Shown in pieces: positions 6,521 through 63,751 of a stretch of 64,000 bases of DNA (position 1 is the first letter of the stretch; every line of letters begins with the position of its first letter). The position numbers and the translations under genes were made by a program. Origin of the DNA: Octopus sinensis (taxonomy: Eukaryota); NCBI RefSeq assembly GCF_006345805.1, contig NC_043001.1:18476001-18540000 (forward strand), in the 5' to 3' direction. Under the pieces are notes generated by a model. It was given only the letters and a program-made list of their open reading frames with translations, made no database searches and was not told where the DNA came from.

Positions 6521-6609
6521 CCAGATAACCGAAGAGATGGTGTTGTGGATTTCCACTTCGGCATCTGAAACTCAGAGTTTTATCTTGACTATTGAGTAAT
6601 TGTAACATA

Positions 6610-7406
6610 TCTATATATATAAAAGTGAAGTTGTGTGAGTGTCTGTCTGCTACGATTTAGATTCCTAACTACTCCCACATTTTGCGGTGCAGTTTAACCA
6701 AATTCGGGTATCTTATAGTCGTGATTCATATCGAGCCCGTCTGAGTATTAGCGCGCGTCTACGATGAGTCTACGATTTTAAAAATAATTTAACATCATTT
6801 TTTTCCATTTTAACGCATATTTTTTCGTGTGTCGATGGCGGCGGAGTTGGCGTCCATGCTCACACCTGCACCTGTTTGCTTCTCCCCCTTCTTCCCTCCC
6901 TCGTGAAGCTGTGGGGAAGGGAGTGTAAAGAAATCAACGTCGTAAAGCGTTGTCAAGGAGACCAGCGTTCTTTTAGAACAACGACTTCATGGTTTGAAGA
7001 CACCAAAACAGAAATGGCTAAGAAAGCCCGAAAGCAAATTCTACAAAATCGGGAAACACGCCACACAGGGAAGGTTTCCCGTGCAAATAATTTGCACAAC
7101 CGAATGTTATAGTTGTTGCACAACTTTTACTTAAAAAATATTATCCAAACACAAACTTTTGAAGGCAATATTGTATGGCGATGATACTTGTGAAATATGG
7201 TAATGGATTTAGTAGCCAAAAGGAGAGAGCAGAGGCATAGTATGGTGGTGGTGGAGGCGGTGGTAGTGGCAGCGGTGGTGGCGGTGGTGCTGGTAGTGGT
7301 GGTGGTGGTGTTGTTGTTGTTGTTGGTAATGATGGTGGTCGTGGTGATGATGGTGGTGGTCGTGGTGGTCGTCGTGTTTGTGTGGTGGTGGTGGTGGTGG
7401 TGGTGG

Positions 7407-7437
<31 letters not shown>

Positions 7438-8297
7438 GGGGGTGGTGATGATGGTGGTGGTGGTGGTGGTGATGATGGTGGTGGTGGTGGTGGTCTTCGT
7501 GGTGGTGGTGGTGATGGTCATGGGCGTAGTGGTGGTGGTGGTCATGGTGGTAGTGATGGTGGTGGTGGTGGTGGCTGAAGCTGTCGTCTGGGTTCTTCCA
7601 ATTTTTCGTGTGTCGGTGGCGGCGTTGGCGTTCATGCTCGCACCTGCACCTGTGTAGCTCCTCCCCTTCTTCCCTCCCTCGTGAAGCTGTGGATAAGGCA
7701 GGGTAGGGAAAATCAACGTCGTAAAGCGTTGTCAAGGAGACCAGCGTTCTTTTAGAACAACGACTTCATGGCTTGAAGTCGCCAAAACAGAAATCGCTAA
7801 AAAAGCTGAAACAGATCCACAAAAACGGCAAAAACCGCCACACAGGGCAGGTTTCCTGTGCAAACAATTTGCACAACCGAATGTTTTAGTTGTTGCACAA
7901 ATCTTTATATATAAAAGTGAAGTTGTGTGTCTGTCTCCTACGATTTAGATTCCTAACTACTCCCACATTTTGCGGTGCAGTTTAACCAAAACCGGGTATC
8001 TTATAGTCGTGATTCATATCGAGCCCTTCTGGGTATTAGCGCGCGTCTACGATGAGTCTACGATTTAAAAAAAAATTACCATCATTTTTTTCCATTTTAA
8101 TGCATTTTTTCGCTATTATATAAGGGAAGTAACTCTCTAAAAATGTCTACGATGAGTCAACGATTAAAAAAAAAATTACCATCAATTTTTATTCCATTTT
8201 TAATGCATTTTTTGCTAATTTTTTGCTATAACTCTCTAAAAATGCTTATATAGTTATTTCCCTTACAAACCCGAGCAACGCCGGGCGATACTGGTAG
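6610..8297 (+). mobile_element. Tandem/compound non-autonomous Helitrons
   Basis: 5' A|TCTATATATATAAAAG at 6610 and again at 7902. Internal block 6830-7125 is repeated at about 7600-7900. 3' CCCGAGCAACGCCGGG hairpin, then CTGGTAG|T. Confidence 0.8.
7240..7575. repeat. (GGT/GAT/GTT)n trinucleotide tract inside the Helitron array
   Basis: Direct reading. It gives the poly-V/H/T/G ORFs. Confidence 0.9.
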
Positions 8298-8329
8298 TTA
8301 TTTTATATATTATATATATATATATATAT

Positions 8330-8362
<33 letters not shown>

Positions 8363-14037: not shown

Positions 14038-14640
14038 CTTATTTCTTTACTGCCCACAAGGGGCTAAACATAGAGGGGACAAACAAGGACAGACAAACGT
14101 ATTAAGTCGATTATATCGACCCAGTGCGTAACTGGTACTTATTTAATCGACCCCGAAAGGATGAGAGGCAAAGTCGACCTCGGCGGAATTTGAACTCAGA
14201 GCGTAGCGGCAGACGAAATACCTATTTCTTTACTACCCACAAGGGGCTAAACATAGAGGGGACAAACAAGGACAGACAAAGAGATTAAGTCGATTACATC
14301 GACCCCAGTGCGTAACTGGTACTTATTTTATCGACCTCGAAAGGATGAAGAGCAAAGTCGACCTCGGCGGAATTTGAACTCAGAGCGTAGCGGCAGACGA
14401 AATACCTATTTCTTTACTACCCACAAGGGGCTAAACACAGAGAGGGCAAACAAGGACAGACAAACGGATTAAGTCGATTATATCGACCCAGTGCGTAACT
14501 GGTACTTATTTAAACGACCCCAAAAGGATGAAAGGCAAAGTCGACCTCGGCGAAATTTGAACTCAGAACGTAACGGCAGACGAAATACCGCAAAGCATTT
14601 TCGCCCGGCGTGCTAACGTTTCTGCCAGTTCGCCGCCTTA
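14038..14640 (-). mobile_element. SINE family B with a triplicated ~183-bp 3' module
   Basis: Minus-strand head AAGGCGGCGAACTGGCAGAAACG at about 14640, then three head-to-tail copies joined at AAAGAAATAGG|TATTTCGTCTGCC. Confidence 0.85.
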
Positions 14641-16333: not shown

Positions 16334-16576
16334 GACTCCGTCCAACCCATGCTAGCATGGAAAACGGATGTTAAACGATGATGATGATATTATTTGGGGG
16401 TGGGGAATGCCTCTTATTTGTCATGAAATGTAGTAAATAATTAATGCCTTTCATTTAAATGGTGTAAAATTGCACATGGTTAAATCCAGTTTTATATAAC
16501 TATATTTTTTTGTTTTTGTTTCAGAAAATTATTTGCTGGAAATATAAATCTTGATGGATATTCTCAAACAAAAGGA

Positions 16577-17861
16577 ATGATGGATGATGAAAGTCAACAA
16601 GAAGTGCAGAATCTCCCACCTGGAAGGTTTAATGACATTAGACTAAAGTTTGAACAAGCTAAACTCACTTCACAGGTGGAAAATGACAATAGTTCAAACG
16701 ACAGTGTCTTTCACAATACTGCCCCTATTCCTAAACCAGCACCAAGGTCATCAGCAGTGATCCCACCAAAACCTACAGTCAAAGTTAAAAAAGTTGATCT
16801 TGAAGAAAAGCCTACTCCTCCTGTTGTCATTCCACGTGTCAAGCGAGATTCACTTATAAAGAATGAAAGCAATGAGGTAGCACAAACGGAAATTGCTAAC
16901 TCAGAGAGTAATAACGGTAACTGTCAACTTCGACCGTTTGTACCAAATCACAAGAGAGGGTTCTCTGATTGTATTACCAGTCAACGTAGTAACTCGTATG
17001 AAAAAGAAAGAAAATCTGACGGTTTTGCAAATTATGGATGTGAGGACATAGATCGTTCTAACGAAGTTTTGAACAAATCTAAAAGTTTCCAAACACCTAA
17101 AAAACCTGAAATTGCAGCTAGGCCTAACACCGCTTTATACGGTCGGGACGGTCTTCAACATAAAAAAGTGACTAGGCACTCATCAGTAAGAGATTGCAAT
17201 AGAAAAGATACTACAGCAAACACCTCACCATTATGCAGTGATACCAAATCTCAGGTTGACATGATGGATAAAGAAAATACAGAAAGCAAAATTCCTAAAA
17301 TTCCGCCAAAACCATTTAATCTTCCAACTGGTACACCACCTAAAAAACCACCTCGGACTTATAAACATGATTTATTAAAAAAAAAATAGGGAATCTGTTG
17401 TCTTTAAAGAAAATGAGATATATGAGATGACAACTCCTAATAAAATATCTAAACCAAAAACTGAAAATGCTCACAAAAGGCCGCCCCGTCCACCCCCAAC
17501 TCGGCCACCTGCCCCTAAATCTCCATTATCAGATAAAGAAAAAGATAAGGGATTGAGGAATTCTTTAAAAACTGTCAACAGTAACTCAAAGCCCTCAGTT
17601 GTTAAAAATTCTGTGATATCAGATGAAAACAATTCAAAATCTAGTTTTAACCTGAGGAGATGTTTAAGTGTGGAAAGTATACATCCTGACAATAAGTCTA
17701 ATTGTAATAATGCAATCTATTTAGAAACATCGAAGTTTGGCAGATCTCGTGATGAATTAGATGCACTGAACAATGTAGAGGTGTATGTAGATGAACAAGG
17801 TTATGCCGTTCCTTACAAATTTTATATCAAAGACGCACCAAACTCAACTAATAGCAAAGAT
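16577..17861 (+). CDS. Large Pro/Lys/Ser-rich disordered exon, tentatively DENND2/ST5-like N-terminus, with a +1 frameshift at A10 (17377-17386)
   Basis: Acceptor ttttgtttcag| at 16524/16525 and donor GAT|gtaagt at 17861/17862. ORFs 16577-17389 and 17427 onward join as KHDLLKK-NRESVVFKENEIYEMTTP if one A is removed. Motifs PPKKPPRTY, ENEIYE, RRCLSVESI and EQGYAVP resemble DENND2-type N-termini. No DENN domain seen. Confidence 0.75.
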
Positions 17862-18218
17862 GTAAGTAAATTCAGATTTATTGTATTTAAATTTTTAACC
17901 TTTTTTTCCGTGTATTATATTTTTGTGTCCCTCACTTCCACTATTTTATTATGTATGTATGTTCTCAAATGTTTATTTCACCTTTCTGCGTGACACATCT
18001 TGTATTATATTGTAGGTTTAGAGGCCAATGAAGAAACCATTTTTCTAGTTATCTCAGGCATGGTTGCATGGTTAAGAAGCTTGGTTTGCAACCATGTGGT
18101 TTCAGGTTCAGTCTCACAGCACTGTGGGCAAGTGTCTTTCACTATATATAGCCCAAGGCTAACCAATACCTTGTGAGTGAATTTGGTTGACAGAAACTGT
18201 AGAAGTCCATTATATATA

Positions 18219-18656
18219 TCTATACATATAAAGCTGAAGTGTGTGTGTCTGTGTGTGTGTGGGTGTGTGGCAGATTTGGTAGCCTTCAACTAACACTATC
18301 TCCTCCAAGGCCCTGTGGCGCAAGTTGACCAAAATTGAGAGTATGATAGAAGGCTTGCTCTTCATTCCGAAGAAGAAAAAATTCAAATCGAACCGTGTTA
18401 AGACCAAAAATTATTTACATAAAAAAATTGCTTTTTTTCTATGAAAACCTCTATTTTTTACTGCTCTGTCGCCATTTTTCGGTGTATTTCAACCAGAAAA
18501 ATGTTCATTTAAAGAGAATAACAAGCTACCCAATGCAAAATTTTTACTTTTCAAAAAAGATTGAAACTATGTCAAAACTTTGTTAACGCAACATCAAAGT
18601 CTGCCGTTAAGCGCAACTAAAAAACAAACCCGAGCAACGCCGGACTATACTGCTAG
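18219..18656 (+). mobile_element. Non-autonomous Helitron
   Basis: A|TC start, CCCGAGCAACGCCGG hairpin, CTAG|T end, inserted between A and T. Confidence 0.85.
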
Positions 18657-19205
18657 TATATATATATATATATTATATATATATATATATATATACAAAA
18701 TCAGAAAATGGAGAAATACATCTAAATCATTAATCAACTACCAGATAATACCCAATCACATACTTTATTGAACCACTACATAAGAACATTAAGGTTAAAC
18801 AAAACAGCGTACATGAATGAGTAATACAATACTATAGGTACAATCATTATAAGAGGATATAAATAAATAAATATAAATAGATATAAATATAAATATACAC
18901 TATATCTTACAGCTGTTTCGGCCATGCAGATAAATATGCCTCATTTTACCTATATTAGCCATGTATAGTATGCCAATATGGAGTTAAAAATGAGACATTT
19001 ACAAATATATCTTAAGGCCTCTTCGGAGATTCTAAAGTATAAACCAAATTACATATATACTCATATAAGTGTGGGTACATACCCATGAATTAATTGCATC
19101 GCAATTATTAGCATTTATGTATTAACTTTGTTGGGTACTTCACTAGCAGTATATTGGATATATGTTATCCCATGGACGGTTGAATTTGCAACCCCAATCT
19201 CAATT

Positions 19206-19247
<42 letters not shown>

Positions 19248-19429
19248 ATATATTTATCATCATCATCATCATATATTTCTTGTCTTGCAAGTTATTTGGT
19301 GATCCTGCCAGTGATGGTGGCATGTAACAAGCACCCAGTACATACTGTGAAATGGTTGGTATTTGGAAGGACATCAAGCTGTAAAAACCATGCCAAAACT
19401 GATCTCACCTGTGCTGGTGCCATGTAAAA

Positions 19430-22400
19430 AAAGAGTGTGCCGACAGATATCAAAGAGTGTGCCGGCAGAGATCAAAGAGTGTGCCGACAGAGATCAAAGA
19501 GTGTGCCGACAAAGATCAAAGACGGTGTCGACAGAGATCAAAGACGGTGCCGATAGAGATCAAAGACGGTGCCGACAGAGATCAAAGAGTGTGCCGACAA
19601 AGAGCAAAGACGGTGCCAACAAACCGGTTCAAACCGGATCAAACCGGTTCAATCCGGATCAAACCGGTTTATTCCGGATAAAACCGGTTCAAACCCGATC
19701 AAACCGGTTCAAACCGGATCAAACCGGATCAGACCGGTACAAACTGGATCAAGCCTGATCAAACCGGATCAAAGACGGTGCCGACAGAGATCAAAGACAG
19801 TGCCGAAAGAGATCAAAGAGTGTGCCGACAAAGATCAAAGACGGTGCCGACAAAGATCAAAGAGTGTGCACATAGAGATCAAAGTGTGTGCCGACAGAGA
19901 TCAAAGACGGTGCCGACAGAGATCAAAGACGGTGCCGTCAGAGATCAAAGACGGTACCGACAGAGATCAAAGAGTGTGCCGACAGAGATCAAATACGGTG
20001 CCGACAGAGATCAAAGAGTGTGTCGACAGAGATCAAAGGCGGTGCCGACAAACCGGTTCAAACCGTATCAAACCGGTTCAAACCGGATCAATCGCGATCA
20101 AACCAGACCAAACCGGATCAAACCGGTTCAAACCAGTTCAATCCGAATCAAACCGGTTCAAACCGCTTCAAACCGGTTGAAACTGGTTGAAACCGGATCA
20201 AACCGGATCAGACCGGTGCAAACTGGATCAAGCCTGATCAAACTGGATCAAAGACGGTGCCGACAAAGATCAAAGACGGTGCCGACAGAGATCAAAGACG
20301 GTGCCGACAAAGATCAAAGAGTGTGCCGACAAAGATCAAAGAGTGTGCCGACAAATATCAAAGGCGGTGCCGACAGAGATCAAAGACGGTGCCGACAGAG
20401 ATCAAAGACGGTGCCGACAGAGATCAAAGACGGTGCCGACAGAGATCAAAGACGGTGCCGACAGAGATCAAAGACGGTGCCGACAGAGATCAAAGACGGT
20501 GCCGACAAAGATCAAAGAGTGTGCCGACAAAGATCAAAGACGGTGTCGACAGAGATCAAAGAGTGTGCCGACAGAGATCAAAGACGGTGCCGACAGAGAT
20601 CAACGACGGGTGCCGACAAAGATGAAAGACGGTGCTGACAGAGATCAAGGAGTGTGCCGACAAAGATCAAAGACGGTGCCGACAAAGATCAAAGACGGTG
20701 TCGACAGAGATCAAAGACGGTCCCGACAGAGATCAAAGAGTGTGCCGACAAAGATTAAAGATGGTGACGACAAACCGGTTCAAACCGGTTCAAACGGATT
20801 CAAACCGGTTCCATCTTGATCAAACCGGTTTAAACCTGATCAAACCGGTTCAAACCGGATCAAACCGGATCAAACCGGATCAAACCGGATCAGACCGGTG
20901 CAAACTGGATCAAGCCTGATCAAACCGGATCAAAGACGGTGCCGACAAAGATCAAAGACGGTGCGACAAAGTTCAAAGACGGTGCCGACAGAGATCAAAG
21001 ACGGTGCCGACAGAGATCAAAGAGTGTGCCGACAAAGATCAAAAACGGTGTCGATAGAGATCAAAGACGGTGCCGAAAGAGATCAAATAATGTGCCGACA
21101 AAGATCAAAGAGTGTGCCGACAGAGATCAAAGACGGTGCCGACAGAGATCAAAGAGTGTACCGACAAAGATCAAAGATGGTGCCGACAAACCGGTTCAAA
21201 CCGGATCAAATCGGTCCAAACCGGTTCAAACCAGTTCAATCCGTATCAAACCGGTTTAAAGCTTTTCAAACCGGTTCAAACCGGATCAAACCGGATCAGA
21301 ACAATGCAAACTGGATCAAGCCTGATCAAACTGGATCAAAGACGGTGCCGACAAAGATCAAAGACGGTGCCGACAAAGATCAAAGATGGTGCAGACAGAG
21401 ATCAAAGACGGTGCCGACATAGATTAAAGAGTGTGCCGACAAAGATCAAAGAGTGTGCCGACAAATATCAAAGACGGTGCCGACAAAGATCAAAGACGGT
21501 GCCGACATAGATCAAAGAGTGTGCCGACAAAGATCAAAGAGTGTGCCGACATAGATCAAAGGCGGTGCCGACAGAGATCAAAGACCGTGCCGACAGAGAT
21601 CAAAGAGTGTGCCGACAAAGATCAAAGAGTGTGCCGACAAAGATAAAAGACGGTGCCGACATAGATCAAAGAGTGTGCCGACAGAGATCAAAGACGGTGC
21701 CGACAGAGATCAAAGACGGGTGTCAACAAAGTTCAAAGACGGTGCCGACAGAGATCAAAGACGGTGCCGACAGAGATTAAAGACGGTGCCGACAGAGATC
21801 AAGGAATGTGCCGACAAAGATCAAAGACGGTGCCGACAAAGATCAAAGACGGTGCCGACAAAGATCAAATAGGGTGCCGACAGAGATCAAAGATGGTGCC
21901 GACAAACCGGTTCAAACCGGTTCAATCCGGATCAAACCGATTAAAACCAGTTCAAACCAGTTCAAACCGGTTCAAACCGGATCAAACCGGTTCAAACCGG
22001 ATCAAACCGGATCAGACAAATATCAAAGGCGGTGCCGATAGAGATCAAAGACGGTGCCGACAGAGATCAAAGACGGTGCCGACAGAGATCAAAGACGGGT
22101 GCCGACAGAGATCAAAGACGGCGCCGACAGAGATCAAGGAGTGTGCCGACAAAGATCAAAGACGTTGCCGACAAAGATCAAAGGCGGTGGCGACAGAAAT
22201 CAAAGACGGTCCCGACATAGATCAAAGTGTGTGCCGACAAAGATCAAAGATGGTGCCGATAAACCGGTTCAAACCGAATCAAACCGGTTCATACCGGTTT
22301 ATTCCGGATCAAACCGGATCAAACGGGTTCAAACCGGATCAAACCGGATCAAACCGGATCAAGCTGTGCAAACTGGATTAAGCCTGATCAAACCGGATCA

Positions 22401-25395
22401 AAGACGGTGCCGACAGAGATCAAAGAGTGTGCCGACAGAGATCAAAGACGGTGCCGACAAAGATCAAAGACGGTGTCGACAGAGATCAAAGACGGTGTCG
22501 ACAGAGATCAAAGAGTGTGCTGACAAAGATTAAAGATGGTGCCGACAAACCGGTTCAAACCGGTTCAAACCGGTTCAAACCGATTCAAACCGGTTCAATC
22601 CAGATCAAACCGGTTTAAACCTGATCAAACCGGTTCAAACCGGTTCAAACCGGATCAGACCGGATCAGACCGGTGCAAACTGGATCAAGCCTGATCAAAC
22701 CGGATCAAAGACGGTGCCGACAAAGATCAAAGACAGTGCGACAAAGATCAAAGACGATGCCGACAGATATCAAAGACCGTGCCGACATAGATCAAAGAGT
22801 GTGCCGAAAGATTTCAAAGACTGTGCCGACAAATATCAAAGGCGGTGCCGACAGAGATCAAAGATGGTGCCGACAGAGATCAAAGACGGGTGCCGACAAA
22901 GATCAAAGACGGTGCCGACATATATCAAAGACGGTGCCGACATATATCAAAGACGGTGCCGACAGAGATCAAGGGGTGTGCCGACAAAGATCAAAGAAGG
23001 TGCCGTCAAACCGGTTCAAACCGGATCAAAACTGTTCAAACCGGTTCAAACCGGTTCATTCCTGATCAAACCGGTTTAAACCTAATGAAACCGGTTCAAA
23101 CCAGATCAAACCGGTCCAAACCGGTTCAATCTTGATCAAACTGGTTAAAAACCTGATCAAACCGGTTCAAACCGGCTCAAACCGGTTCAAACCGGATCAA
23201 ACTGGTTCAAACCGGATGAAACCGGATCAGACCAGATCAGACCGGTGCAAAGTGGATCAAGCCTGATCAAACCGGATCAAAGACGGTGCCGACAAAGATC
23301 AAAGACGGTGCCGACATAGATCAAATACGGTGCCGACAGAGATCAAAGACGGTGCCGACAGAGATCAAAGACGGTGCCGACAGAGATCAAAGAGTGTGCC
23401 GACAAAGATCAAAGACGGTGCCGACAAAGATCAAAGACGGTGCCGACAGAGATCAAAGACAGTGCCGACAGAGATCAAAGAGTGTGCCGACAGAGATCAA
23501 AGACGGTGCCGACAGAGATCAAAGAGTGTGTTGACAAAGATCAAAGGCGGTGCCGACAAACCGGTTCAAACCGTATCAAACCGATTCAAACCGGTTCAAT
23601 CGAGTTCAAACCGGTTCAAACCGGTTCAAACCACTTCAATCCGGATCAAACCGGTTTAAACCTGATCAAACCGGTTCAAACCGGTTCAAACCGCATCAAA
23701 CCGGTTCAAACAAGATCAAACCGGTTCAGACCGGTGCAAACAGGATCAAGCCTGATGAAACTGATCAAAGACGGTGCCGACAAAGATCAAAGACGGTGCC
23801 GACAAAGATCAAAGACGGTGCCGACATAGATCAAAGACGGTGCCGACAGAGATCAAAGACAGTGCCGACAGAGAACAATGACGGTGCCGACAGAGATCAA
23901 AGACGGGTGCCGACAAAGATCAAAGACTGTGCCGACAGAGACCAAAGACGGTGCCGACATAGATCAAGGAGTGTGCCGACAAAGATCAAAGACGGTGCCG
24001 ACAGAGATCAAAGACGGTCCCGACAGAGATCAAGGAGTGTGCCAACAAAGATCAAAGAATGTGCCGACAGCGATCAAAGACGGTGCCGACATCGATCAAA
24101 GACGGGTGCCGACAAAGATCAAAGACGGTGCCGACAGAGATCAAAGAGTGTGCTGACAAAGATCAAAGAAGGTGCCGACAAAGATCAAAGACGGTGCCGA
24201 CAGAGATCAAAGACGGTGCCGACAGAGATCAAAGAGTGTGCTGACAAAGATCAAAGACGGTGCTGACAGAGATCAAAGAGTGTGTCGACAATGATCAAAG
24301 GCGTTGTCGACAAACCGGTTCAAACCGTATCATACCGGTTCAAACCGGTTCAATCAGGATCAAACTGGATCAGACCGGATCAAACAGGTTCAAACCAGTT
24401 CAATCCGGATCAAACCGGTTTAAACCTGATCAAACCGGTTCAAACCGGTTCAAACCGCATCAAACCGGTTCAAACCGGCTCAAACCGGATCAAACCGGGT
24501 CAGACCGGTGCAAACTGGATCAAGCCTGATCAAACTGGATCAAAGACGGTGCCGAAAAAGATCATAGACGGTGCCGACATAGATCAAACACGGTGCCGAC
24601 AGAGATCAAAGACGGTGCCGACATAGATCAAAGACTGTGCCGACAAAGATCAAAGAGTGTGCCGACAAAGATCAACGACGGTGCCGACATAGATCAAAGA
24701 GTGTGCCGACAGAGATCAAAGACGGTGCCGACAGAGATCAAAGACGGGTGCCGACAAAGATCAAAAACGGTGCCGACAGAGATCAAAGACGGTGCCGACA
24801 GAGATCAAGGAGTGTGCCGGCAAAGATCAAAGTCGGTGCCGACAAAGATCAAAGACGGTGCTGACAGAGATCAAAGACGGTCCCGACAGAGATCAAAGTG
24901 TGTGCCGACAAAGATCAAAGATGGTGCCGACAAACCGGTTGAAACCGGATCAAACCGGTTCAAACCGGTTCAAACCGGATCAAACCGGTTCAAACCGGAT
25001 CAAACCGGATGAGACCGGTGCAAACTGGATCAAGCCTGATCAAACCGGATCAAAGACGGTGCTGACAAAGATCAATAACGGTGCCGACAAAGATCAAAGA
25101 CGGTGCCGACAGAGATCAAAGACGGTGCCGACAGAGATCAAAGACGGTGCCGACAGAGATCAAAGAGTGTGCCGACAAAGATCAAAGACGGTGCCGACAG
25201 AGATCAAAGACGGTGCCGACAGAGATCAAAGAATGTGCCGACAAAGATCAAAGACGGTGCCGACAGAGATCAAAGAGTGTGCTGACAAAGATCAAAGAAG
25301 GTGCCGACAAAGATCAAAGACGGTGCCGACAGAGATCAAAGACGGTGCCGACAGAGATCAAAGAGTGTGCCAACAAAGATCAAAGACGGTGCTAC
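19430..25395 (+). repeat. ~6-kb compound higher-order satellite (22-bp unit blocks alternating with 10-bp unit blocks)
   Basis: Unit A is AGATCAAAGACGGTGCCGACAG (variant AGATCAAAGAGTGTGCCGACAA). Unit B is AAACCGGTTC/AAACCGGATC. About 11 B blocks, most closed by AGACCGGTGCAAACTGGATCAAGCCTGATC. Confidence 0.97.
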
Positions 25396-25591
25396 GTTAC
25401 GGCAACGTAAGCACACCAACATCGGTTGTCAAGCGATGGTGAAGGGGACAAACAGACAAATAACAAATACATGCACACACATACACACACACAAACACAC
25501 ACACACACACACACATAGGTGCTCCAGCATGGCCACTGCTCATGAGCTGAAACTAGATCAAATCATATCAATATATATATATATATATATG

Positions 25592-26100
25592 CTAGCAGTA
25601 TCGCCCGGCGTTGCTCGGGTTTGTAAGGGAAATAACTATATAAGCATTTTTAGAGAGTTACTTCCCTTATAGATGCCAATTCGGGCTTTCTTAACCATTT
25701 ATGTTTTGGTGTCTTCAAGCCATGAAGTCGTTGTTCTAAAAGAACGCTGGTCACCTTGACAACGCATTACGACGTTGATTTCCTTAAACTCCCTTCCCCA
25801 CAAATTCACGAGGGAGGGAAGAAGGGGGAGAAGCAAACAGGTGCAGCTGTGAGCGTGGACGCCAACTCCGCCGCCATCGACACACGAAAAATTATGCATT
25901 AAAATGGAATAAAAAATGATGTTAAATTATTTTTAAAATCGTAGACTCATCGTAGACGCGCGCTAATAGCCAGACGGGCTTGATATTAATCACGACTATA
26001 AGATACCCGAATTTGATTAAACTGCACCGCAAAATGTGGGAGGAGTTAGGAATCTAAATCGTAGGAGACAGACACTCACACAACTACAGTTTTATATATA
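25592..26100 (-). mobile_element. Non-autonomous Helitron
   Basis: Reverse complement of the 6610-family sequence, with the CCCGAGCAACGCCGGG hairpin and CTAG at 25592. Confidence 0.8.
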
Positions 26101-26102
26101 TA

Positions 26103-26166
<64 letters not shown>

Positions 26167-26627
26167 ATATAAACACATACGACGGGCTTCTTTCAGTTTC
26201 TGTCAACCAAATCCACTCACAAGGCTTTGGTCAGCCCGAGGCTATAGTAGAAGACACTTGCCCAAGGTGCCACGCACTGGTGACTGAACCCGGAACCATG
26301 TGGTTGGGAAGCAAGCTTCTTACTACACAGCCACTGGAAATTTATTGAATAAATTTCATCTCTTTTCAGGAGTGCCAAGTAGAAATAAAACGAACGAATT
26401 TATCTGACAGCCAGATAGTAGTAACCTACGAGTTACTTATCATTAAAATTCAGTATTCATTACTGTCACGATCTTCTCAAAAAGAATAAAAGCACTTATC
26501 TGGATTCCTTCAAAGAAGACAGAAGATTTGTAAATTTATATCAAGCTTGTACTAGAGTCAAAATAATTTGGGGGATTATAGTCTTAACATAAAAGAATGA
26601 ATAATTTCTATGAATAGTCACTATATA

Positions 26628-27030
26628 GGCGCAGGAGTGGCTGTGTGGTAAGTGGCTTGCTTACCGACCACATGGTTCCGGGTTCAGTCCCACTGCATGG
26701 CACCTTGGGCAAGTGTCTTCTACTATAGCCTCCGGCCGACCAAAGCCTTGTGAGTGGATTTGGTAGACGGAAACTGAAAGAAGCCCGGCGTATATATGTA
26801 TGTAAGTGTGTGTGTATATGTTTGTGTGTCTGTGTTTGTCCCCACCCCCAACGTCTCTTGACAACCGATGCTGGTGTGTTTACGTCCCCGTAACTTAGCA
26901 GTTCGGCAAAAGAGATCGATAGAATAAGTACTAGGCTTATAGAGAATAAGTCCTGGGTCGATTTGCTCGACTAAAGGCGGTGCTCCAGCATGGCCGCAGT
27001 CAAAATGACTGAAACAAGTAAAAGAGTAAA
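26628..27030 (+). mobile_element. Full-length SINE, family A
   Basis: Same head and tail as the 13131 copy. Confidence 0.85.
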
Positions 27031-27689
27031 AAAGATAAATTAAAGACTAGAACTCATAAAATATTAGTTTATCCTAACATCATTATCATAAACTTCTGAT
27101 GGAGGAATATGAAGGGCGACAAAGTTGCTGTAGCATCAGACAAGACATTTTTTTGCGGCATTTTGTTTCTGTCCTTTTTGGTTTGGGTGTTGTTTAATCT
27201 CACCAGTCGACTTAGCCACGCGACCTTCTGCAGTCGATAAAATAAGTATCCTTCAAATCTTAGAATCAATTTAATCAAATATACCCACTCGCAAATTTAT
27301 GACGTTGTGTCTACTGAGAAATATTTGAAAATATGTTTTCCCTTGATAAATAGAGGAGACATATTTAATCTTTTTTAGAAGGCTTCTAAAACAAAGCATA
27401 GCTTCTTCATAACTTGCCAAAGTATTAAAGAGTAAAATGTTTGCAATATTAAACCGTAAATTTGTCGGCATGGAAAAATAAATAAATGCTATAAGATTAA
27501 ATTTGTTTGAATACTATTTACATAATAATTATTAAACACTGACAGTTTAATATGAAAGTATATTTGGTGATTAAAATATTCAGCTAAAGTGTAAACACAT
27601 ACAGTAAAAGAAATGCAAACATAATCTACGACTGATATTTTTTCATTAATAATAGGGTGAATGTTTTGCGTCGCCAGCATCTATAATAT

Positions 27690-28022
27690 ATCCTGAAGAT
27701 CACCTGACGTGACCAAAATCACAATCAATGAAATCATGAAAAGAGCTGGCCTAAGTAGTCTGCAACCAAACGAAGAAAGCTGCTGGGCCATGTATCGCAC
27801 TTATCGTTGGCGAGACCGGCAAGGATAGCTGTCGAGTGGACAGTTGGAGGAGGAAGGAAAAGAGAGGGAGGCTAGTGAAGACGTGGCACAGGACTGTGTG
27901 GGAAGATTTGACCGAGATGAGTGTCACCTGGGAAAAAAGGGTACAGTTTGGTTCAGAACGGTATCTCTTGGAGAATTTCTTATCGCCTGATGACCTTTAA
28001 GCGAACGAAGATAACATCATCA
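27690..28022 (+). mobile_element. RTE LINE 3' fragment
   Basis: Frameshifted RRKLLGHV...GGRKRGRLVKTWHRTVWEDL, ending in a (CAT)n tail. Confidence 0.65.
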
Positions 28023-28042
28023 TCCTCAGCAGCAGCAACTAA

Positions 28043-28385
28043 TGGAGGCGCAATGGCCCAGTGGTTAGGGCAGCGGACTCGCGGTCGGAGGATCGCGGTT
28101 TATTGAGCGAAAACACCTAAAGCTCCACGAGGCTCCGGCAGGGGGTAGTGGTGGCGACTCCTGTTGTACTCTTTCGCTCCAACTTTCTGTCACTCTTTCT
28201 TCCCGTTTCTTGTCTCCGACTTCCTACGCAACCGCTGAACCTGGATGCGCATTCATCTATCCGTCGATGCTCTTGGTGTCGGGGTTTGACCTGCTTTCTC
28301 TTCTGCGGGTCTTACGAATAGCAAAGGACCATGTTTCGGACTTCTCCTACTGGGACGAAGACCGCTTCGCTCAACAAACAAACAA
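28043..28385 (+). mobile_element. tRNA-derived SINE family C (inverted copy at 29597-29987)
   Basis: GGAGGCGCAATGGCCCAGTGGTTAGGGCAGCG A-box-like head. The second copy is on the minus strand. Confidence 0.75.
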
Positions 28386-28541
28386 GCAGCAGTAACAATT
28401 AAGGCAGATATCTTCAGATTCATTTTGCCTTTCATTGAACACTCCTCAGCGTGGTATAGGTGCTAGGTAGCTCGTCGAAATTTCGTTTTTGTATCTAGCT
28501 TGCAAGATTCTTTATGCGAATTTGTGTGTTGACACAAATGT

Positions 28542-28728
28542 TGTGTCTCAGGAGAGTCATTATGCCAATATAATTAACACGTACACTGGTTCAATTCCAC
28601 TTCGTTATTATTAGTCAATTGGTTAAATATCCAACTAACTAATCGATTGGTTTTTAAGTTTTCAAAAGGAGTGGAATTAAACCAGTGCGTGTGTTAATAA
28701 CATTGGCATAATGACCTCCCTAGACACA
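28542..28728. repeat. Imperfect inverted repeat (~60-bp arms), MITE-like
   Basis: TGTGTCT...GTCATTATGCCAAT...CACTGGTTCAATTCCACT pairs with AGTGGAATTAAACCAGTG...ATTGGCATAATGAC...AGACACA. Confidence 0.7.
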
Positions 28729-28746
28729 GCATAGCTTGTCGAAGTA

Positions 28747-29138
28747 TCTTTATATATAAAAGAGAGGTTGTGTGCTGTCTGTCTCCTACGATTTAGATTC
28801 CTAACTACTCCCACATTTTGCGGTGCAGTTTAACCAAAACCGGGTATCTTATAGTCGTGATTCATATCGAGCCCTTCTGGGTATTAGCGCGCGTCTACGA
28901 TGAGTCTACGATTAAAAAAAAATTACCATCAATTTTTCCCATTTTTAATGCATTTTTGGCATACATAAGGGAAGTAACTCTCTAAAAATTTATTATTAAA
29001 TCTCAGAACGTAAAAAGCTACAGTAACACCCCCCCTTTGTGGTTACCATATTGAGATGGCTGTTATACTTTACATCTCTAAAAATGCTTATATAGTTATT
29101 CCCTTACAAACCCGAGCAACGCCGGGCAATACTGCTAG
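28747..29138 (+). mobile_element. Non-autonomous Helitron
   Basis: A|TCTTTATATATAAAAG start, CCCGAGCAACGCCGGG hairpin, CTAG|T end. Confidence 0.85.
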
Positions 29139-30016
29139 TTAACAATAAAATAGCAACGTATACTACACGTTACACTTGTTGACGTGGAGTAAACGAAATA
29201 TCGAAAAATTTTATTTGTAATATCAGTTGTTCAATGTATTCATTTCGTGAGTTGGTGAGAGTAACACAAAAGTAATAACAGTTCTTGGAGTGAGTAGCAA
29301 GAATCTAAGTAGAGTTCTTTAGAATATAAAGAATTTATCACGTGTGAATAAAGAAAAATTTTGCTTTCAAATTCAGTTAGGAAGATGGAACGCAAATAAG
29401 AAGAAATGAAGGAAAAAGGAAAATAAAGAAATTGGCTCTGATATTCTTGTAAATTATTACAGTGATCAAAGAACCTATTGTTTGATTGAGATCTTAGATG
29501 TTGGCATACGCTTCTTCGAAATATATTTGCCTCTGGTTATAATACCGTTGGTTCTAATGATATCACATCTTGTCCAATGATATTGTAGGTTATCATAATT
29601 ATTCAGCATTCTTTATACATGGGAAGCACTCCGTCGGTTACGACGATGAGGGTTCCGGTTGATCCGAATAAACGGAACAGCCTGCTCGTGAAATTAACGT
29701 GTAAGTGGCTGAGCACTCCACAGACACGTGCACCCTTAACGATATTCAGCGTGACACAGAGAGTGACAAGGCCGGCCCCTTGAAGGTACAACAGAAACAG
29801 GAAGTAAGAGTGAGAGAAAGTTGTGGTGAAAGAGTACAGCAGGGATCACCACCATCCCCTGCCGGAGCCTCGTGGAGCTTTTAGGTGTTTTCGCTCAATA
29901 AACACTCATAACACCCGGTCTGGGAATCGAAACCGCGATCCTATGACCGCGAGTTCGCTGCCCTAACCACTGGGCCATTGCGCCTCCACATTTTTATACA
30001 TGATATTGTATATGTA

Positions 30017-33859: not shown

Positions 33860-35076
33860 AATGTGTCATTAACTAAAATTTCAAATAATATTTTCCGTTT
33901 TGAAATTTTAGTTAATGACACGTTTTTCGAGAGTTAAGTAAACTTTTTTTTATTTAAGAAATTATATTGTATTCTATATAACAATTGATTATTAAATTTG
34001 AATTTATAATTATTTGAGTTGTTAATGATAATTTAGATATGGACATTTATTTAATTATTATTAGTTTATAATTATTATATCTGAACGCAAATTTTAAGAT
34101 ATTAGTTAGTCACTGTGGTATATAAATCGTAAAAATGTTTTTGATAACGATGATAATAGTGATGATAATAGTAATAATAATTTTTTTAAAAACAGGTTGT
34201 ACGTTTTTAATTTGATTTTTCAAATTTTAAATTGTATTTCATAAATATATTCTATAGATATTTATAATATTTATGTAAGTAATAATGGACTAATCTATTT
34301 TGGTTATATGTTTGTATATTAATTGATAGAGAAAATTTTAGATTTTTAATTACTATATTTGTGATTATAATTTAGATACTTATTTTTATGTATTTATTAT
34401 TTTATAATTATTAGATGTGAACTTAAATCTAAAAATATGGATCTTTTCGGTTTGGACGGCAGTTTTTTCTAGCGGTGTCATATGAAATGTCACCCATAAT
34501 TATGACCCTAGAATCGATCTATTGCATTTCAATCTCTTTTAGGGTTAGGGTTAGTTAGGGTTAGTGTTAGGGATGGGGGTAGGGTATCTTTTTTCTCAGA
34601 AATGTAAATAAACCCAATCTGTTTCTTAAACGAGGGACATATTCATACGGCACAGAATGATTTCACCTCAATAGACGTCATTGATTTATTTTGAAAATAA
34701 ATATTGTTTAACTTTATTTGCTCATTTATTTAACTATTATCATTAACCTGAAGATTGACTATAATTTTAAATCTAATTTATTTCAATTGAATTTAAACTT
34801 AATTGTAATTCGAATTTAATTGTAGCCATGAAACGTACGTAGTTTTTTTTTACTTATTATATATTGATAGTTCATTTTTATACTTTTTGAGATCGAGTTA
34901 TATGTTTTATAAAAATATATTTTATTTGTTATTTATGTTTTGGTTTATGTCTATAACTGTTTGAGTGCATGATAGTGGTTTTATCTCTAATTTATATTGT
35001 GAAATTGGATTTAATGCTAACTTGAATTGTTCTCTGTAAGTTTGGAGTTATAATCCCTATATTATTGTTATATACA

Positions 35077-35116
<40 letters not shown>

Positions 35117-35208
35117 ACATATATATGTATTACATATATATATATACATGATATATATGTATATATGTATATACATACATATATAGATATATAGATAGAT
35201 ATATATAC

Positions 35209-35252
<44 letters not shown>

Positions 35253-35680
35253 CATATATATATATACATATAGATATATAATATACATATATATATTAAC
35301 ATATATATATATACTATATATATATATACATATATATTATATATACATATATATATTATATACATATATTATATATACATATATATATATATGTATATAT
35401 ATTTATATGTATATATATATATTATAATTTATATGTAAAATATATTATAAATATATATATATGTATATATATATATATATGTATATATTATATATATATA
35501 TATATATATTATGTATATATATATATGATATATATATATATGTATATATATATATATTATATATTATATAGTATATATATGTATATATTTATATATTATA
35601 TATATATATATGTATATATATGTATATATATTATATAATATATATATGTATGTATAATATTATGTATATATATATATATG

Positions 35681-35748
<68 letters not shown>

Positions 35749-36963
35749 ACAATAACATTAGGGATTATAACTCCAAACTTACAGAGAACAATTCAAGTTA
35801 GCATTAAATCCAATTTCACAATATAAATTAGAGATAAAACCACTATCATGCAACTCAAACAGTTATAGACATAAACCAAAACATAAATAACAAATAAAAT
35901 ATATTTTTATAAAACATATAACTCGATCTCAAAAAGTATAAAAATGAACTATCAATATATAATAAGTAAAAAAAAACTACGTACGTTTCATGGCTACAAT
36001 TAAATTCGAATTACAATTAAGTTTAAATTCAATTGAAATAAATTAGATTTAAAATTATAGTCAATCTTCAGGTTAATGATAATAGTTAAATAAATGAGCA
36101 AATAAAGTTAAAACAATATTTATTTTCAAAATAAATCAATGACGTCTATTGAGGTGAAATCATTCTGTGCCGTATGAATATGTCCCTCGTTTAAGAAACA
36201 GATTGGGTTTATTTACATTTCTGAAGAAAAAAAGATACCCTACCCCCATCCCTAACACTAACCCTAACTAACCCTAACCCTAAAAGAGATTGAAATGCAA
36301 TAGATCGATTCTAGGGTCATAATTATGGGTGACATTTCATATGACACCGCTAGAAAAAACTGCCGTCCAAACCGAAAAGATCCATATTTTTAGATTTAAG
36401 TTCACATCTAATAATTATAAAATAATAAATACATAAAAATAAGTATCTAAATTATAATCAACAAATATAGTAATTAAAAATCTAAAATTTTCTCTATCAA
36501 TTAATATACAAACATATAACCAAAAATAGATTAGTCCATTATTACTTACATAAATATTATAAATATCTATAGAATATATTTATGAAATACAATTTAAAAT
36601 TTGAAAAATCAAATTAAAAACGTACAACCTGTTTTAAAAAAAAATTATTATTACTATTATCATCACTATTATCATCGTTATCAAAAACATTTTTACGATC
36701 TATATACCACAGTGACTAACTAATATCTTAAAATTTGCGTTCAGATATAATAATTATAAACTAATAATAATTAAATAAATGTCCATATCTAAATTATCAT
36801 TAACAACTCAAATAATTATAAATTCAAATTTAATAATCAATAGTTATATAGAATACAATATAATTTCTTAAATAAAAAAGTTTACTTAACTCTCGAAAAG
36901 CGTGTCATTAACTAAAATTTCAAAACGGAAAATATTATTTGAAATTTTAGTTAATGACACATT
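33860..36963. repeat. 3.1-kb palindrome: ~1.2-kb arms around a ~0.7-kb TA-rich spacer
   Basis: 33860-~35075 is the reverse complement of ~35740-36963 with only scattered differences. Confidence 0.95.
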
Positions 36964-45284: not shown

Positions 45285-45533
45285 TTATATGCTGACAGTA
45301 ATGACTCCGGAGATTTGCAAGATGGAGAACAAGAGATAAAGAATCCACATAAGGAATGTACAACATGCTGTGATATATTTTGTTAAATTTGGGCCGCCGA
45401 GTTCTGCTTTGCCAAATACCGGATGCAGACGGCGCAAAACGAGTAGAGACATCGTCAATGCGGAGAAGACGGTATACAGTACAACGGTGAATGCCAGACT
45501 TTCAGTTTTGCCTTGGAAATTGAATTTGGTACC
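45285..45533 (-). CDS. SLC8A: Na+/Ca2+ exchanger, last exon (final TM helices)
   Basis: Acceptor tttttcag|GGT, phase 0. GTKFNFQGKTESLAFTVVLYTVF...LRRLHPVFGKAELGGPNLTKY...MWILYLLFSILQ...TVSI* with TAA at 45287-45285. Matches the NCX RR...GELGGP...LW motif. Absent from the ORF track. Confidence 0.93.
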   Translation of the reverse strand, partial: GTKFNFQGKTESLAFTVVLYTVFSALTMSLLVLRRLHPVFGKAELGGPNLTKYITACCTFLMWILYLLFSILQISGVITVSI

Positions 45534-47509: not shown

Positions 47510-48312
47510 TATTTCTTTATTGTCCACAAGGAGCTAAACATAGCGGCGGACGAAATACCTATTTTTTTACTACCCACAAGGGGCTAAACATAGAGGGGAC
47601 AAACAAGGACACACAAACGGATTAAGTCGATTATATCGACCCCAGTGCGTAACAGGTACTTATTTAATCGACCCCGAAAGGATGAAAGGCAAAGTCGACC
47701 TCGGCAGAATTTGAACTCAGAACGTAACGGCAGACGAAATATCTATTTCTATTTCTTTACCACCCACAAGGGGCTAAACACAGAGGGGACAAACAAGGAC
47801 AGGCAAACGTAACTGGTACTTATTTAATCGACCCCGAAAGGATGAAAGGCTAAGTCGACCTCGGCGGAATTTGACCTCAGAATGTAAAGACAGACGAAAT
47901 AGCTATTTCTTTACTGCCCACAAGGGGCTAAACACAGAGAGGACAAACAAGGACAGACAAACGGATTAAGTCGATTATATCGACCCCAGTGCGTAACTGG
48001 TACTTATTTAATCGACCCCGAAAGGATGAAGGGCAAAGTCGACCTCGGGGGAATTTGAACTCAGAACGTAGCGGCGGACGAAATACCTATTTCTTTACTA
48101 CCCACAAGGGGCTAAACATAGAGGGGACAAACAATGTCAGACAAAGGGATTAAGTCGATTACATCGACCCCAGTGCGTAACTGGTACTTATTTAATCGAC
48201 CCCGAAAGGATGAAAGGCAAAGTCGACCTCGGGGGAATTTGAACTCAGAACGTAGCGGCAGACGAAATACCGCTAAGCATTTCGCCCGCCGTACTAACGA
48301 TTCTGCCAGCTT
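47510..48312 (-). mobile_element. SINE family B with about 4-5 tandem 3' modules
   Basis: Same junction and module as 14038-14640. Confidence 0.85.
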
Positions 48313-48410
48313 AAATGCTAAAAAGAGCATTCTGTCCGACGCTTTGCTAATCCACCACTTCTAAAAGTTAATGTACAGAAAAAAAGAATCTAGAAAAGAA
48401 TTCCACTCAC

Positions 48411-48740
48411 GTTGCTGTAGTGATACACGGAAGCAATAAACCAAGGAAGTCCAAGACCCAGAAACACATTAACTGCGTTGCTTCCATTTATGTTTCCAAT
48501 TGCATTATCCGCCCATTTCTCTTGCAGGGCTGCTTGTCTGCTGGCAAATGTATCTGGCATACTGGTCCCTAGAGCAACGAGTGTGATGGCCGTTATACTC
48601 TTGTTTAAGTCGATCAGACAACCGAAGATCGAGGCCAAGTCACTGATCAATGCTGTTATAACGCCGATCATAGCTAACGAGAAGACAAACGTTAACCAGC
48701 CTCCACACAGCGACGGCGGTGGCACAAAAGCAAATACGAT
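48411..48740 (-). CDS. SLC8A: Na+/Ca2+ exchanger exon with the alpha-2 repeat
   Basis: tttcag|ATC ... AAC|gtgagt, 330 bp, phase 0/0. IVFAFVPPPSLCGGW...VALGTSMPDTFAS...IGNINGSNAVNVFLGLGLPW. Confidence 0.97.
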
Positions 48741-49098
48741 CTGAAACGAGAACATTCATGGTTATAGCCAGGAGTTGACTTGAATAATTAAAAAAAGTAT
48801 CAAATTTACTATGGACTGCTATGCATATTCTTTAATCTGCAATTCTGTGAATCTATTATAAATGCTAAAATGTAGGAGCTGACGAAGGAGTATCTGAGGG
48901 GCCACAAGTATGAGGAACAGTGTCTTTATAATCACCACAAATAATTTAAGAGTGGGAAGATTGATACCGTTGATGTTCGGCTTTAATAACTGCAAGCCAA
49001 CTTTTGTAGGGAAAATGGGAACAAGAATAGAATTCCAGAAGGCTGATACTTATGGGAGTGAATTTTATAATTCAGTTCATTATTTTTCAGTTAAATAC

Positions 49099-63318: not shown

Positions 63319-63405
<87 letters not shown>

Positions 63406-63453
63406 ACACGAACGCACACACAAACAGACAAAATATTTAAAAATCAAATTTAC

Positions 63454-63683: not shown

Positions 63684-63751
63684 CTGTAATTATAAATACA
63701 TATAAACTGTACAAATCTCATTTAAATAAATACATTTCACAATTACTGCAA

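What the first reader, a model, noticed from the sequence alone, without database searches (positions are those of the whole stretch)
19430..25395. Intronic satellite that reads like a natural TOPflash: TCF/LEF site plus helper motif in every 22-mer
Seen: nearly every A unit contains AGATCAAAG followed within about 10 bp by GCCG and usually CGGT (ACCG on the other strand); some have GGCGGT. From array length that is roughly 150-190 copies (estimate). Known: AGATCAAAG is the optimal TCF/LEF HMG site used in TOPflash reporters, and C-clamp TCFs, typical of invertebrates, also bind adjacent RCCG/GCCGCC helper sites. Inference: a Wnt-responsive super-enhancer, TCF sink or condensate seed in an intron. 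Caveat: any short unit may match some motif by chance.
Basis: partly seen in the sequence, partly recalled or inferred. Interest (0 to 1): 0.75.

Follow-up and report, generated by a model that had tools for sequence, protein, structure and literature searches.

The report
Octopus tandem repeat with TCF-like sites
A 6-kb, recently evolved tandem repeat in an octopus genome carries about 160 good-looking binding sites for the Wnt-pathway factor TCF, but its evolution looks like that of ordinary fast-changing repeat DNA, not a selected regulatory element.

Summary
Window 19430-25392 is one tandem array with 157 ATCAAAG (135 AGATCAAAG), all on the + strand and none elsewhere in the window. 81% are followed within 10 bp by GCCG.

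AAGATCAAAGA-CGGT-GCCGACA has a perfect CTTTGWWS element. A 6/7 Helper (GCCGACA vs GCCGCCR) sits in the favourable "Akimbo" orientation at 4 bp.

The array is composite: 12 blocks of a 22-mer (A, 68%) alternate with 11 blocks of a 10-mer (B, CAAACCGGWT, 31%). B lacks CAAAG and instead carries 59 copies of the Grainyhead consensus AACCGGTT.

The orthologous O. vulgaris locus has the same junctions but a 9.2-kb array with a rearranged interior. Two more distant cephalopods have no such array at the orthologous exon. Variants do not consistently spare the TCF core, and a core-breaking variant (CAAGG) has spread.

Best reading: a lineage-specific minisatellite evolving by unequal exchange and conversion, whose TCF-like sites are a by-product of the amplified seed. 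Binding in vitro is likely; a selected Wnt function is unsupported and untested. "Intronic" is not established. A genome-wide census could not be run.

The parts
19430..25392 (+). Whole composite tandem array: 12 A blocks and 11 B blocks, all units in one orientation
   Evidence: TRF; block segmentation; motif counts
19430..19619 (+). First A block (22-mer AGATCAAAGACGGTGCCGACAG); colinear with the first A block of O. vulgaris. The other A blocks fill the intervals between the B blocks listed below
19620..19773 (+). B block 1 (10-mer CAAACCGGWT)
   Evidence: TRF
20049..20252 (+). B block 2
   Evidence: TRF
20771..20934 (+). B block 3
   Evidence: TRF
21187..21340 (+). B block 4
   Evidence: TRF
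21903..22014 (+). B block 5
   Evidence: TRF
22261..22402 (+). B block 6
   Evidence: TRF
22546..22709 (+). B block 7
   Evidence: TRF
23006..23281 (+). B block 8
   Evidence: TRF
23557..23749 (+). B block 9
   Evidence: TRF
24311..24544 (+). B block 10
   Evidence: TRF
24931..25054 (+). B block 11; it and the final A block (25055-25392) are colinear with O. vulgaris apart from one 22-bp unit
19300..19429 (+). Left flank: truncated SINE fragment (GGAAGGGCATCCAGCTGTAGAAAC family; a fuller copy lies at 2160-1960 on the minus strand). The junction is identical in O. vulgaris
25393..25470 (+). Right flank: 5'-truncated copy of a second, common SINE (other copies near 10709, 14910, 13397, 26900, 32915). 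The junction is identical in O. vulgaris
25580..26090 (.). Species-specific insertion of a dispersed element into the (TA)n next to the array; absent in O. vulgaris
16525..17861 (+). Large N-terminal coding exon of a DENN-domain (DENND2-like) gene. Acceptor at 16524, GTAAGT donor at 17862, apparent 1-nt frameshift in an A10 run at about 17375-17385. The array begins 1.57 kb downstream
45315..45521 (-). Last coding exon of a Na+/Ca2+ exchanger gene (other exons at 48390-48755 and 63271-63717). The array lies about 20 kb beyond its 3' end, outside its coding region

Best explanation
This is a young, lineage-restricted composite minisatellite. A 22-bp unit (A) and a 10-bp unit (B) were amplified together as A+B modules between two truncated SINE copies. 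B is plausibly a deletion derivative of A: GATCAAA + CCG. This happened after the lineage split from other octopods and before the split between the window's species and O. vulgaris. The array changes by unequal exchange and intra-array gene conversion: its edges stay orthologous while its interior is reshuffled and its length drifts. Because the seed unit happened to contain CTTTGATC next to GCCG, every amplification copied a competent-looking HMG + Helper site. The roughly 160 TCF-like sites are therefore a by-product of amplification, not a product of selection. Shown: the anatomy, the orthology, the turnover, and the lack of consistent motif sparing. Inferred: neutrality, and the mechanism of amplification.
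For: Modules: every B-to-A junction in both species carries the same tail, cagaccggtgcaaactggatcaagcctgatcaaaccg|GATCAAAG.
Orthology: L001 1-2611 matches window 17260-19863 at 95%, and L001 11557-15106 matches window 26093-29621 at 98%. Both array junctions are identical.
Turnover: the array is 5.96 kb with about 190 A units in the window, against 9.2 kb with about 325 A units in O. vulgaris. Interior alignments reach only 80-90% identity at many offsets.
Conversion: orthologous edge units repeatedly swap the two-base CG/GT variant and the position-22 G/A variant.
Lineage restriction: there is no A or B repeat in the 49.7-kb orthologous gene of GCA_054771915.1, nor within 10 kb of the exon in a more distant cephalopod.
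No consistent constraint: in the window, core ATCAAAG is 2.5% non-consensus against 3.4% elsewhere (p=0.28). The core-breaking variant CAAGG occurs 7 times in the window and 11 times in O. vulgaris. Between species, edge units show 5 differences in AGATCAAAG against 7 in the other 10 non-dimorphic positions.
31% of the array (B) lacks the core altogether.
Against: The bipartite match is a priori improbable for a single unit, about 0.04% or less. The orientation and spacing (AK4) fall in the range that works best for Drosophila TCF/Pan and human TCF1E. In O. vulgaris the core is about 2.7-fold less variable than the rest (p=0.012, one-sided, uncorrected). The B unit also matches a well-known site, Grainyhead AACCGGTT x59, so two consensus sites in one array may be more than coincidence. 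Homogeneity in young arrays hides selection, so the sparing tests have little power. No chromatin, methylation or expression data were available.
Confidence: 0.65

Rival explanations
1. The array is a working TCF/Pangolin platform: a Wnt-responsive enhancer for a nearby gene (the DENN-domain gene or the Na+/Ca2+ exchanger), or a local hub or sink that concentrates TCF and beta-catenin.
For: There is a perfect CTTTGWWS element in about 157 units. A short Helper (GCCG, and ACCG on the other strand) and a 6/7 extended Helper sit in AK4, and also KK0 relative to the next unit. Non-vertebrate TCFs carry a C-clamp (PMC4267635 abstract). Tandem decoy sites can reshape TF dose-response in yeast (PMC3322331). 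The core is less variable in O. vulgaris. The array has persisted since the two species split.
Against: No exact GCCGCCR is present, and all seven Helper positions matter in the nkd reporter. There is no sparing of the core in the window or in orthologous edge units. A core-breaking variant has spread. The array is absent in two other cephalopods. Unit number differs about 1.7-fold between sister species. As a sink, a few hundred sites per nucleus is small against typical TF copy numbers (inference from general knowledge). ATCAAAG also fits the general SOX/HMG consensus WWCAAWG (general knowledge), so it is not TCF-specific.
Confidence: 0.15
2. The array is one copy of a dispersed, transposon-borne satellite family, such as the internal tandem repeats of a mobile element. 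Its location here would then say nothing about local regulation.
For: Both flanks are transposon fragments and the window is dense in SINEs. Transposon-derived satellites are common in molluscs (general knowledge).
Against: No A or B units occur elsewhere in the 58 kb of window or in the flanks of L001. Neither unit resembles the flanking SINE consensuses beyond shuffled controls. Only one protein model derived from such an array exists among 5.8 billion proteins, and a 66-aa probe found none; this is weak evidence. The two flanks belong to different SINE families, so the array is not a simple insertion into one element.
Confidence: 0.15
3. The array encodes a repetitive protein, as the O. vulgaris annotation implies.
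For: Long open frames on the + strand, up to 318 aa. O. vulgaris has a 250-aa 'hypothetical protein' and an 840-aa model that ends inside the array.
Against: The unit has no stop codon in any + frame and its period (22) is not a multiple of 3, so open frames arise automatically. Single-base indels and whole-unit indels are tolerated. There are no homologues and no Pfam domains. B blocks are read through in the same way.
Confidence: 0.02

Closest known systems
Intronic/intergenic minisatellites (VNTRs) and higher-order satellite arrays evolving by unequal exchange and conversion
   Same: Head-to-tail units in one orientation. Two unit types are propagated together as modules. The edges are orthologous and the interior reshuffled. 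Length differs about 1.5-fold between sister species. The array is restricted to one lineage.
   Different: The interleaving of a 22-mer and a derived 10-mer in 12 alternations is somewhat unusual. Genome-wide copy number is unknown.
Bipartite HMG-Helper Wnt-response elements of C-clamp TCFs (Drosophila TCF/Pangolin, C. elegans POP-1, human TCF1E/TCF4E)
   Same: CTTTGATC matches CTTTGWWS 8/8. The 11-mer matches SCTTTGWWSWW at 9-10/11. A GC-rich element lies 4 bp away in the Akimbo orientation, the class with the best binding and activity, with a peak at AK6.
   Different: The Helper is GCCGACA, not GCCGCCR. Natural W-CRMs hold a few such pairs, not about 160. There is no evidence of binding, Wnt response or sequence constraint.
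TOPflash / SuperTOPflash synthetic reporters (3-16 tandem TCF sites)
   Same: The same core AGATCAAAG, repeated head to tail at short spacing (for the reporter principle; the reporter core sequence is from my own knowledge).
   Different: The base after the core is A, not G. No minimal promoter is known nearby. There are 10-20 times more sites. [quoted passage not shown]
Repeated decoy transcription-factor sites (Lee and Maheshri 2012, yeast synthetic arrays)
   Same: A tandem array of competent sites that could titrate a factor.
   Different: That system was engineered and measured; nothing has been measured here. The number of sites is modest.
Grainyhead/GRHL response element AACCGGTT
   Same: An exact 8-bp consensus occurs 59 times in the B blocks.
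   Different: The site is a by-product of the CAAACCGGTT/CAAACCGGAT alternation. There is no evidence of binding.

Membership tests
Tandem repeat array (minisatellite/satellite) | Head-to-tail copies of a unit, far more than chance | tested here: met
   TRF score 2773-3241, period 22/44/66; 190 A and 200 B units
Tandem repeat array (minisatellite/satellite) | Copy-number and arrangement turnover between related genomes, with conserved flanks | tested here: met
   5.96 kb vs 9.2 kb with identical junctions; interior only 80-90% alignable
Tandem repeat array (minisatellite/satellite) | Many arrays or high genomic abundance (satellite in the strict sense) | not testable with these tools
Indirect evidence only: no other array-derived proteins in the collections
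Bipartite TCF (HMG + C-clamp) Wnt-response element | HMG site CTTTGWWS / SCTTTGWWSWW | tested here: met
   CTTTGATC 8/8 in 148-157 units. The 11-mer TCTTTGATCT[C/T/A] matches 9-10/11; position 1 is T, not S
Bipartite TCF (HMG + C-clamp) Wnt-response element | Helper site GCCGCCR (RCCGCC); short form RCCG | tested here: inconclusive
   GCCGCCR 0 of 157. GCCGACA (6/7, first four bases intact) in 117. GCCG in 127. ACCG on the other strand in 89. All seven positions matter for full activity, the first four most
Bipartite TCF (HMG + C-clamp) Wnt-response element | Helper close to the HMG site in a productive orientation (AK, best at 6; FF0) | tested here: met
   The unit is AK4 by the published oligo definitions (AK0 = AAGATCAAAGG+GCCGCCA), and also KK0 with the preceding unit's Helper
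Bipartite TCF (HMG + C-clamp) Wnt-response element | Sites kept by selection: variants spare the motif, or it is conserved in orthologues | tested here: not met
   Window 2.5% vs 3.4%, p=0.28. O. vulgaris 1.5% vs 4.2%, p=0.012 but confounded. Orthologous edge units 5 vs 7 differences. No array in L004 or L002
Bipartite TCF (HMG + C-clamp) Wnt-response element | TCF occupancy and beta-catenin-dependent activation | not testable with these tools
   Needs EMSA, CUT&Tag and reporter assays
Bipartite TCF (HMG + C-clamp) Wnt-response element | The organism's TCF has a C-clamp | not tested
   Literature states that non-vertebrate TCFs carry it. The octopus gene was not examined
Intronic element | Lies between two exons of one transcript | tested here: inconclusive
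   The upstream exon with a GTAAGT donor ends at 17861. No downstream exon of the 969-aa homologue is found in 17.9-64 kb, whereas in L004 the next exon is 1.87 kb away. The exon carries a frameshift
Grainyhead response element (B blocks) | AACCGGTT consensus | tested here: met
   59 copies in the array, 1 outside it; consensus from PMC5829564. Binding not testable

The most novel reading that the evidence does not exclude
The array is a co-opted regulatory module made of alternating blocks of sites. Grainyhead (a pioneer factor; AACCGGTT in B blocks) would keep it open in epithelia. About 160-300 HMG+Helper sites (A blocks) would then recruit TCF/beta-catenin. The result would be a natural 'TOPflash': a lineage-specific, copy-number-tunable Wnt-responsive enhancer or TCF hub near a DENN-domain gene and a Na+/Ca2+ exchanger in the Octopus vulgaris group.
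Probability: 0.08. Interest if true: 0.75.

Novelty: new member of a known kind. Interest (0 to 1): 0.3.

Why it matters
If the array were bound by TCF in vivo, it would be a rare natural case of a tandem repeat acting as a multimerised Wnt-response element. Its strength could change simply by gaining or losing units, and it would serve as a ready-made, species-matched Wnt reporter for cephalopods. As the evidence stands, its main value is cautionary. A short repeat unit can match a famous bipartite site almost perfectly, and its sister unit can match a second famous site, while the array still evolves like neutral repeat DNA. It also matters for annotation: the O. vulgaris gene set contains protein models read out of this array.

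Tried and rejected
2. Origin of the units from the flanking SINEs: local alignment of A and B dimers to both SINE consensuses, on both strands, was no better than shuffled units (best 15/300 and 19/300). Rejected as unsupported.
3. The array lying inside the Na+/Ca2+ exchanger gene: its last coding exon is at 45521-45315, 20 kb away. Rejected.
4. Known RNA families in 16-28 kb: none.
5. The unit sequences in the literature: no paper contains them. A search for octopus satellite papers gave nothing relevant.
6. A 66-aa translation of pure A units against 5.8 billion proteins, to catch short contigs from other octopus data sets: no hits.
7. Conserved downstream exons via the distant locus L002: none found.
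8. A crisp higher-order period: none in the window. O. vulgaris shows only loose modules of about 1.3-1.4 kb at about 87% identity.
Full report
**1. What is there**

Tandem Repeats Finder reports one array at 19430-25392 with periods 22/44/66, and nested 10-bp arrays inside it. Reading the sequence and segmenting it shows a composite structure.
- 12 blocks of a 22-mer (A; consensus AGATCAAAGACGGTGCCGACAG) total 4,057 bp.
- 11 blocks of a 10-mer (B; CAAACCGGAT/CAAACCGGTT) total 1,854 bp and alternate with the A blocks.
- Wrap-around alignment gives 190 A units (166 complete, 35 identical to the consensus) and 200 B units.
- All units point the same way.
- B shares GATCAAA and CCG with A, so it looks like a deletion derivative of A (inference).
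- The + strand has no stop codon in any frame. This explains the long open frames, which are not evidence of coding.

**2.

- The array contains AGATCAAAG 135 times and ATCAAAG 157 times, all on the + strand. AGATCAAAG occurs nowhere else in the window.
- Of the 157 ATCAAAG, 127 are followed within 10 bp by GCCG, 89 by CGGT and 117 by GCCGACA.
- GGCGGT occurs 7 times. The canonical Helper GCCGCC(R) never occurs.

**3. How good the TCF match is**

Published consensuses:
- The HMG site is SCTTTGWWSWW, or CTTTGWWS.
- The Helper is GCCGCCR (fly), RCCGCC or RCCG (human).
- All seven Helper bases count for full activity, the first four most.
- The best configurations are AK6 and FF0, and AK is active at most spacings.
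- The supplementary oligos define AK as AAGATCAAAGG followed by GCCGCCA; AK3 is AAGATCAAAGG-ACG-GCCGCCA.

The A unit reads [G/A/T]AGATCAAAGA-CGGT-GCCGACA.
- CTTTGATC matches CTTTGWWS 8/8.
- The 11-mer matches 9-10/11.
- The Helper matches 6/7, with its first four bases intact.
- The configuration is AK4, and also KK0 with the Helper of the preceding unit.

ATCAAAG also fits the general SOX/HMG consensus (my own knowledge), so it is not unique to TCF.

For a random 22-bp unit I estimate these probabilities:
- 1.1-1.8% for WWCAAAG on either strand;
- 0.04-0.06% with GCCG in the AK position;
- about 0.004% for ATCAAAG plus a 6/7 Helper.

That is rare for one array. Given hundreds of TF specificities and thousands of repeat families per genome, such a match is expected somewhere (inference).

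The B blocks make the same point. They carry the exact Grainyhead consensus AACCGGTT 59 times, against once elsewhere in the window.

**4. Relatives**

A translated array ORF hit one "hypothetical protein" of Octopus vulgaris. Its locus is L001 (OX597818.1:51117656-51138408), and it is orthologous.
- L001 1-2611 matches window 17260-19863 at 95%. L001 11557-15106 matches window 26093-29621 at 98%, and colinearity continues beyond that.
- Both array junctions are identical in the two species.
- The O. vulgaris array is 9.2 kb, with about 325 A units and about 13 B blocks.
- The first ~430 bp and the last ~460 bp are colinear, down to unit-specific variants.
- The interior aligns only at 80-90% and at many offsets.
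- Every B-to-A junction in both species carries the same 37-bp tail, so A+B modules were duplicated as units.
- Orthologous edge units often differ by the two-base CG/GT variant or the position-22 variant. This points to conversion between units rather than point mutation.

**5. Age and distribution**

The exon upstream of the array has homologues in two other cephalopods.
- In GCA_054771915.1 (L004; 80% nucleotide identity in the exon) the following intron is 1.87 kb. The whole 49.7-kb locus has no A or B repeat.
- In a more distant species (L002; 43% protein identity) there is no such repeat within 10 kb.
- The array therefore arose within the lineage leading to the O. vulgaris group.

A 66-aa probe of pure A units found nothing among 5.8 billion proteins. 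This is weak evidence that the family is not abundant. The direct genome-wide search could not be run.

**6. Test for selection on the motif**

Per-position non-consensus frequencies, leaving out the dimorphic positions 11, 12 and 22:

| Array | Core ATCAAAG | Other positions | Test |
|---|---|---|---|
| Window | 2.5% | 3.4% | Mann-Whitney p=0.28 |
| O. vulgaris | 1.5% | 4.2% | one-sided p=0.012 |

The O. vulgaris difference is confounded. The core is AT-rich and the rest is GC- and CpG-rich, and copies are not independent.

- In orthologous edge units, between-species differences fall 5 times in AGATCAAAG (positions 2, 2, 5, 9, 9) and 7 times in the other ten positions.
- A core-breaking variant, GATCAAGG, has been propagated 7 times in the window and 11 times in O. 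vulgaris.
- There is thus no consistent sign that the TCF core is protected, but the power of these tests is low in a young, homogenised array.
- CpG observed/expected is 1.2 in the array and 0.86 in the rest of the window. The locus as a whole is not CpG-depleted, so the array's CpG richness says little.

**7. Context**

- The left flank is a truncated SINE; a fuller copy lies at 2160-1960 on the minus strand.
- The right flank is a 5'-truncated copy of a second, very common SINE.
- Neither repeat unit resembles these SINEs beyond shuffled controls.
- Upstream, 16525-17861 is the large N-terminal exon of a DENN-domain protein. The 969-aa homologue P0005 has uDENN, DENN and dDENN domains. The exon ends in a GTAAGT donor.
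- None of the 15 downstream exons seen in L004 occur in window 17.9-64 kb.
- The exon has a frameshift in an A10 run. The O. vulgaris copy has two frameshifts.
- So the array lies either in a very long intron or next to a decaying exon. "Intronic" is not established.
- A Na+/Ca2+ exchanger gene on the minus strand ends at 45315, 20 kb away.
- No Rfam family matches the region.

**8. Verdict**

The object is a lineage-specific composite minisatellite that evolves by unequal exchange and conversion. Its TCF-like sites are most simply explained as copies of a fortuitous seed (confidence about 0.65).

It would very probably bind TCF HMG domains in vitro (inference). Whether it is occupied, open or Wnt-responsive in vivo cannot be judged from sequence.

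The functional reading keeps about 0.15 probability. The more elaborate Grainyhead-plus-TCF reading keeps about 0.08. Interest is modest: it is a neat natural look-alike of a synthetic reporter, so far without any sign of function.

Noticed in passing
window B blocks, e.g. 19620-19773, 20049-20252, 23006-23281: The alternating CAAACCGGTT/CAAACCGGAT units create the exact Grainyhead/GRHL consensus AACCGGTT 59 times in the array, against once in the rest of the window; O. vulgaris has 55. A second textbook TF site therefore sits in the same array.
   Followed up: partly
window 16525-17861 (+), especially 17375-17385: This is the N-terminal exon of a DENN-domain (DENND2-like) gene. It has an apparent 1-nt frameshift in an A10 run, and the O. 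vulgaris copy shows two frameshifts. No downstream DENN exons occur in the next 46 kb, although a related octopod has the next exon 1.87 kb away. It may be a relic or partial gene copy, an assembly error in a homopolymer, or an exon followed by a very long intron.
   Followed up: partly
window 25580-26090: A ~510-bp dispersed element is inserted into the (TA)n beside the array. It is absent from the orthologous O. vulgaris site. Other copies lie at 6604-7032 (94%), 7906-8330 and 28745-29138, which suggests a recently active element that lands in TA microsatellites.
   Followed up: partly
L001 10001-10753 and L001 1-7468 (O. vulgaris OX597818.1): The public O. vulgaris annotation contains a 250-aa 'hypothetical protein' read entirely from the array, and an 840-aa model that ends inside it. 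These are probably annotation artefacts of a repeat with no stop codons on one strand.
   Followed up: partly
P0002 (Scotinomys teguina hypothetical protein): Its C-terminal half is SNRIKxxQTG repeats, the translation of the same 10-mer (TCAAACCGGA)n. A similar simple repeat therefore exists in a rodent assembly, by convergence or contamination.
   Followed up: no
window 34149-34824 vs 35995-36676, centre 35069-35748: Mirror-image tandem-repeat calls (GATGATAATAGT / ATTATCATCACT; TTAGGG / ACCCTA; 17-mers) flank a long (TA)n. An O. vulgaris segment matches both arms in opposite orientation. This is a large inverted repeat with short telomere-like TTAGGG runs; another TTAGGG run lies at 61965-62004.
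   Followed up: no
window 45315-45521, 48390-48755, 63271-63717 (-): These are exons of a Na+/Ca2+ exchanger (Na_Ca_ex and Calx-beta domains). The gene runs on the minus strand, tail-to-tail with the DENN-domain exon. If the DENN gene really continues beyond the window, the exchanger gene would be nested in its intron.
   Followed up: partly
window 14040-14589 and 47808-48271: A 184-bp unit is repeated 2.5-3 times in tandem at two separate places in the window. It looks like a tRNA-like SINE that forms short tandem clusters.
   Followed up: no
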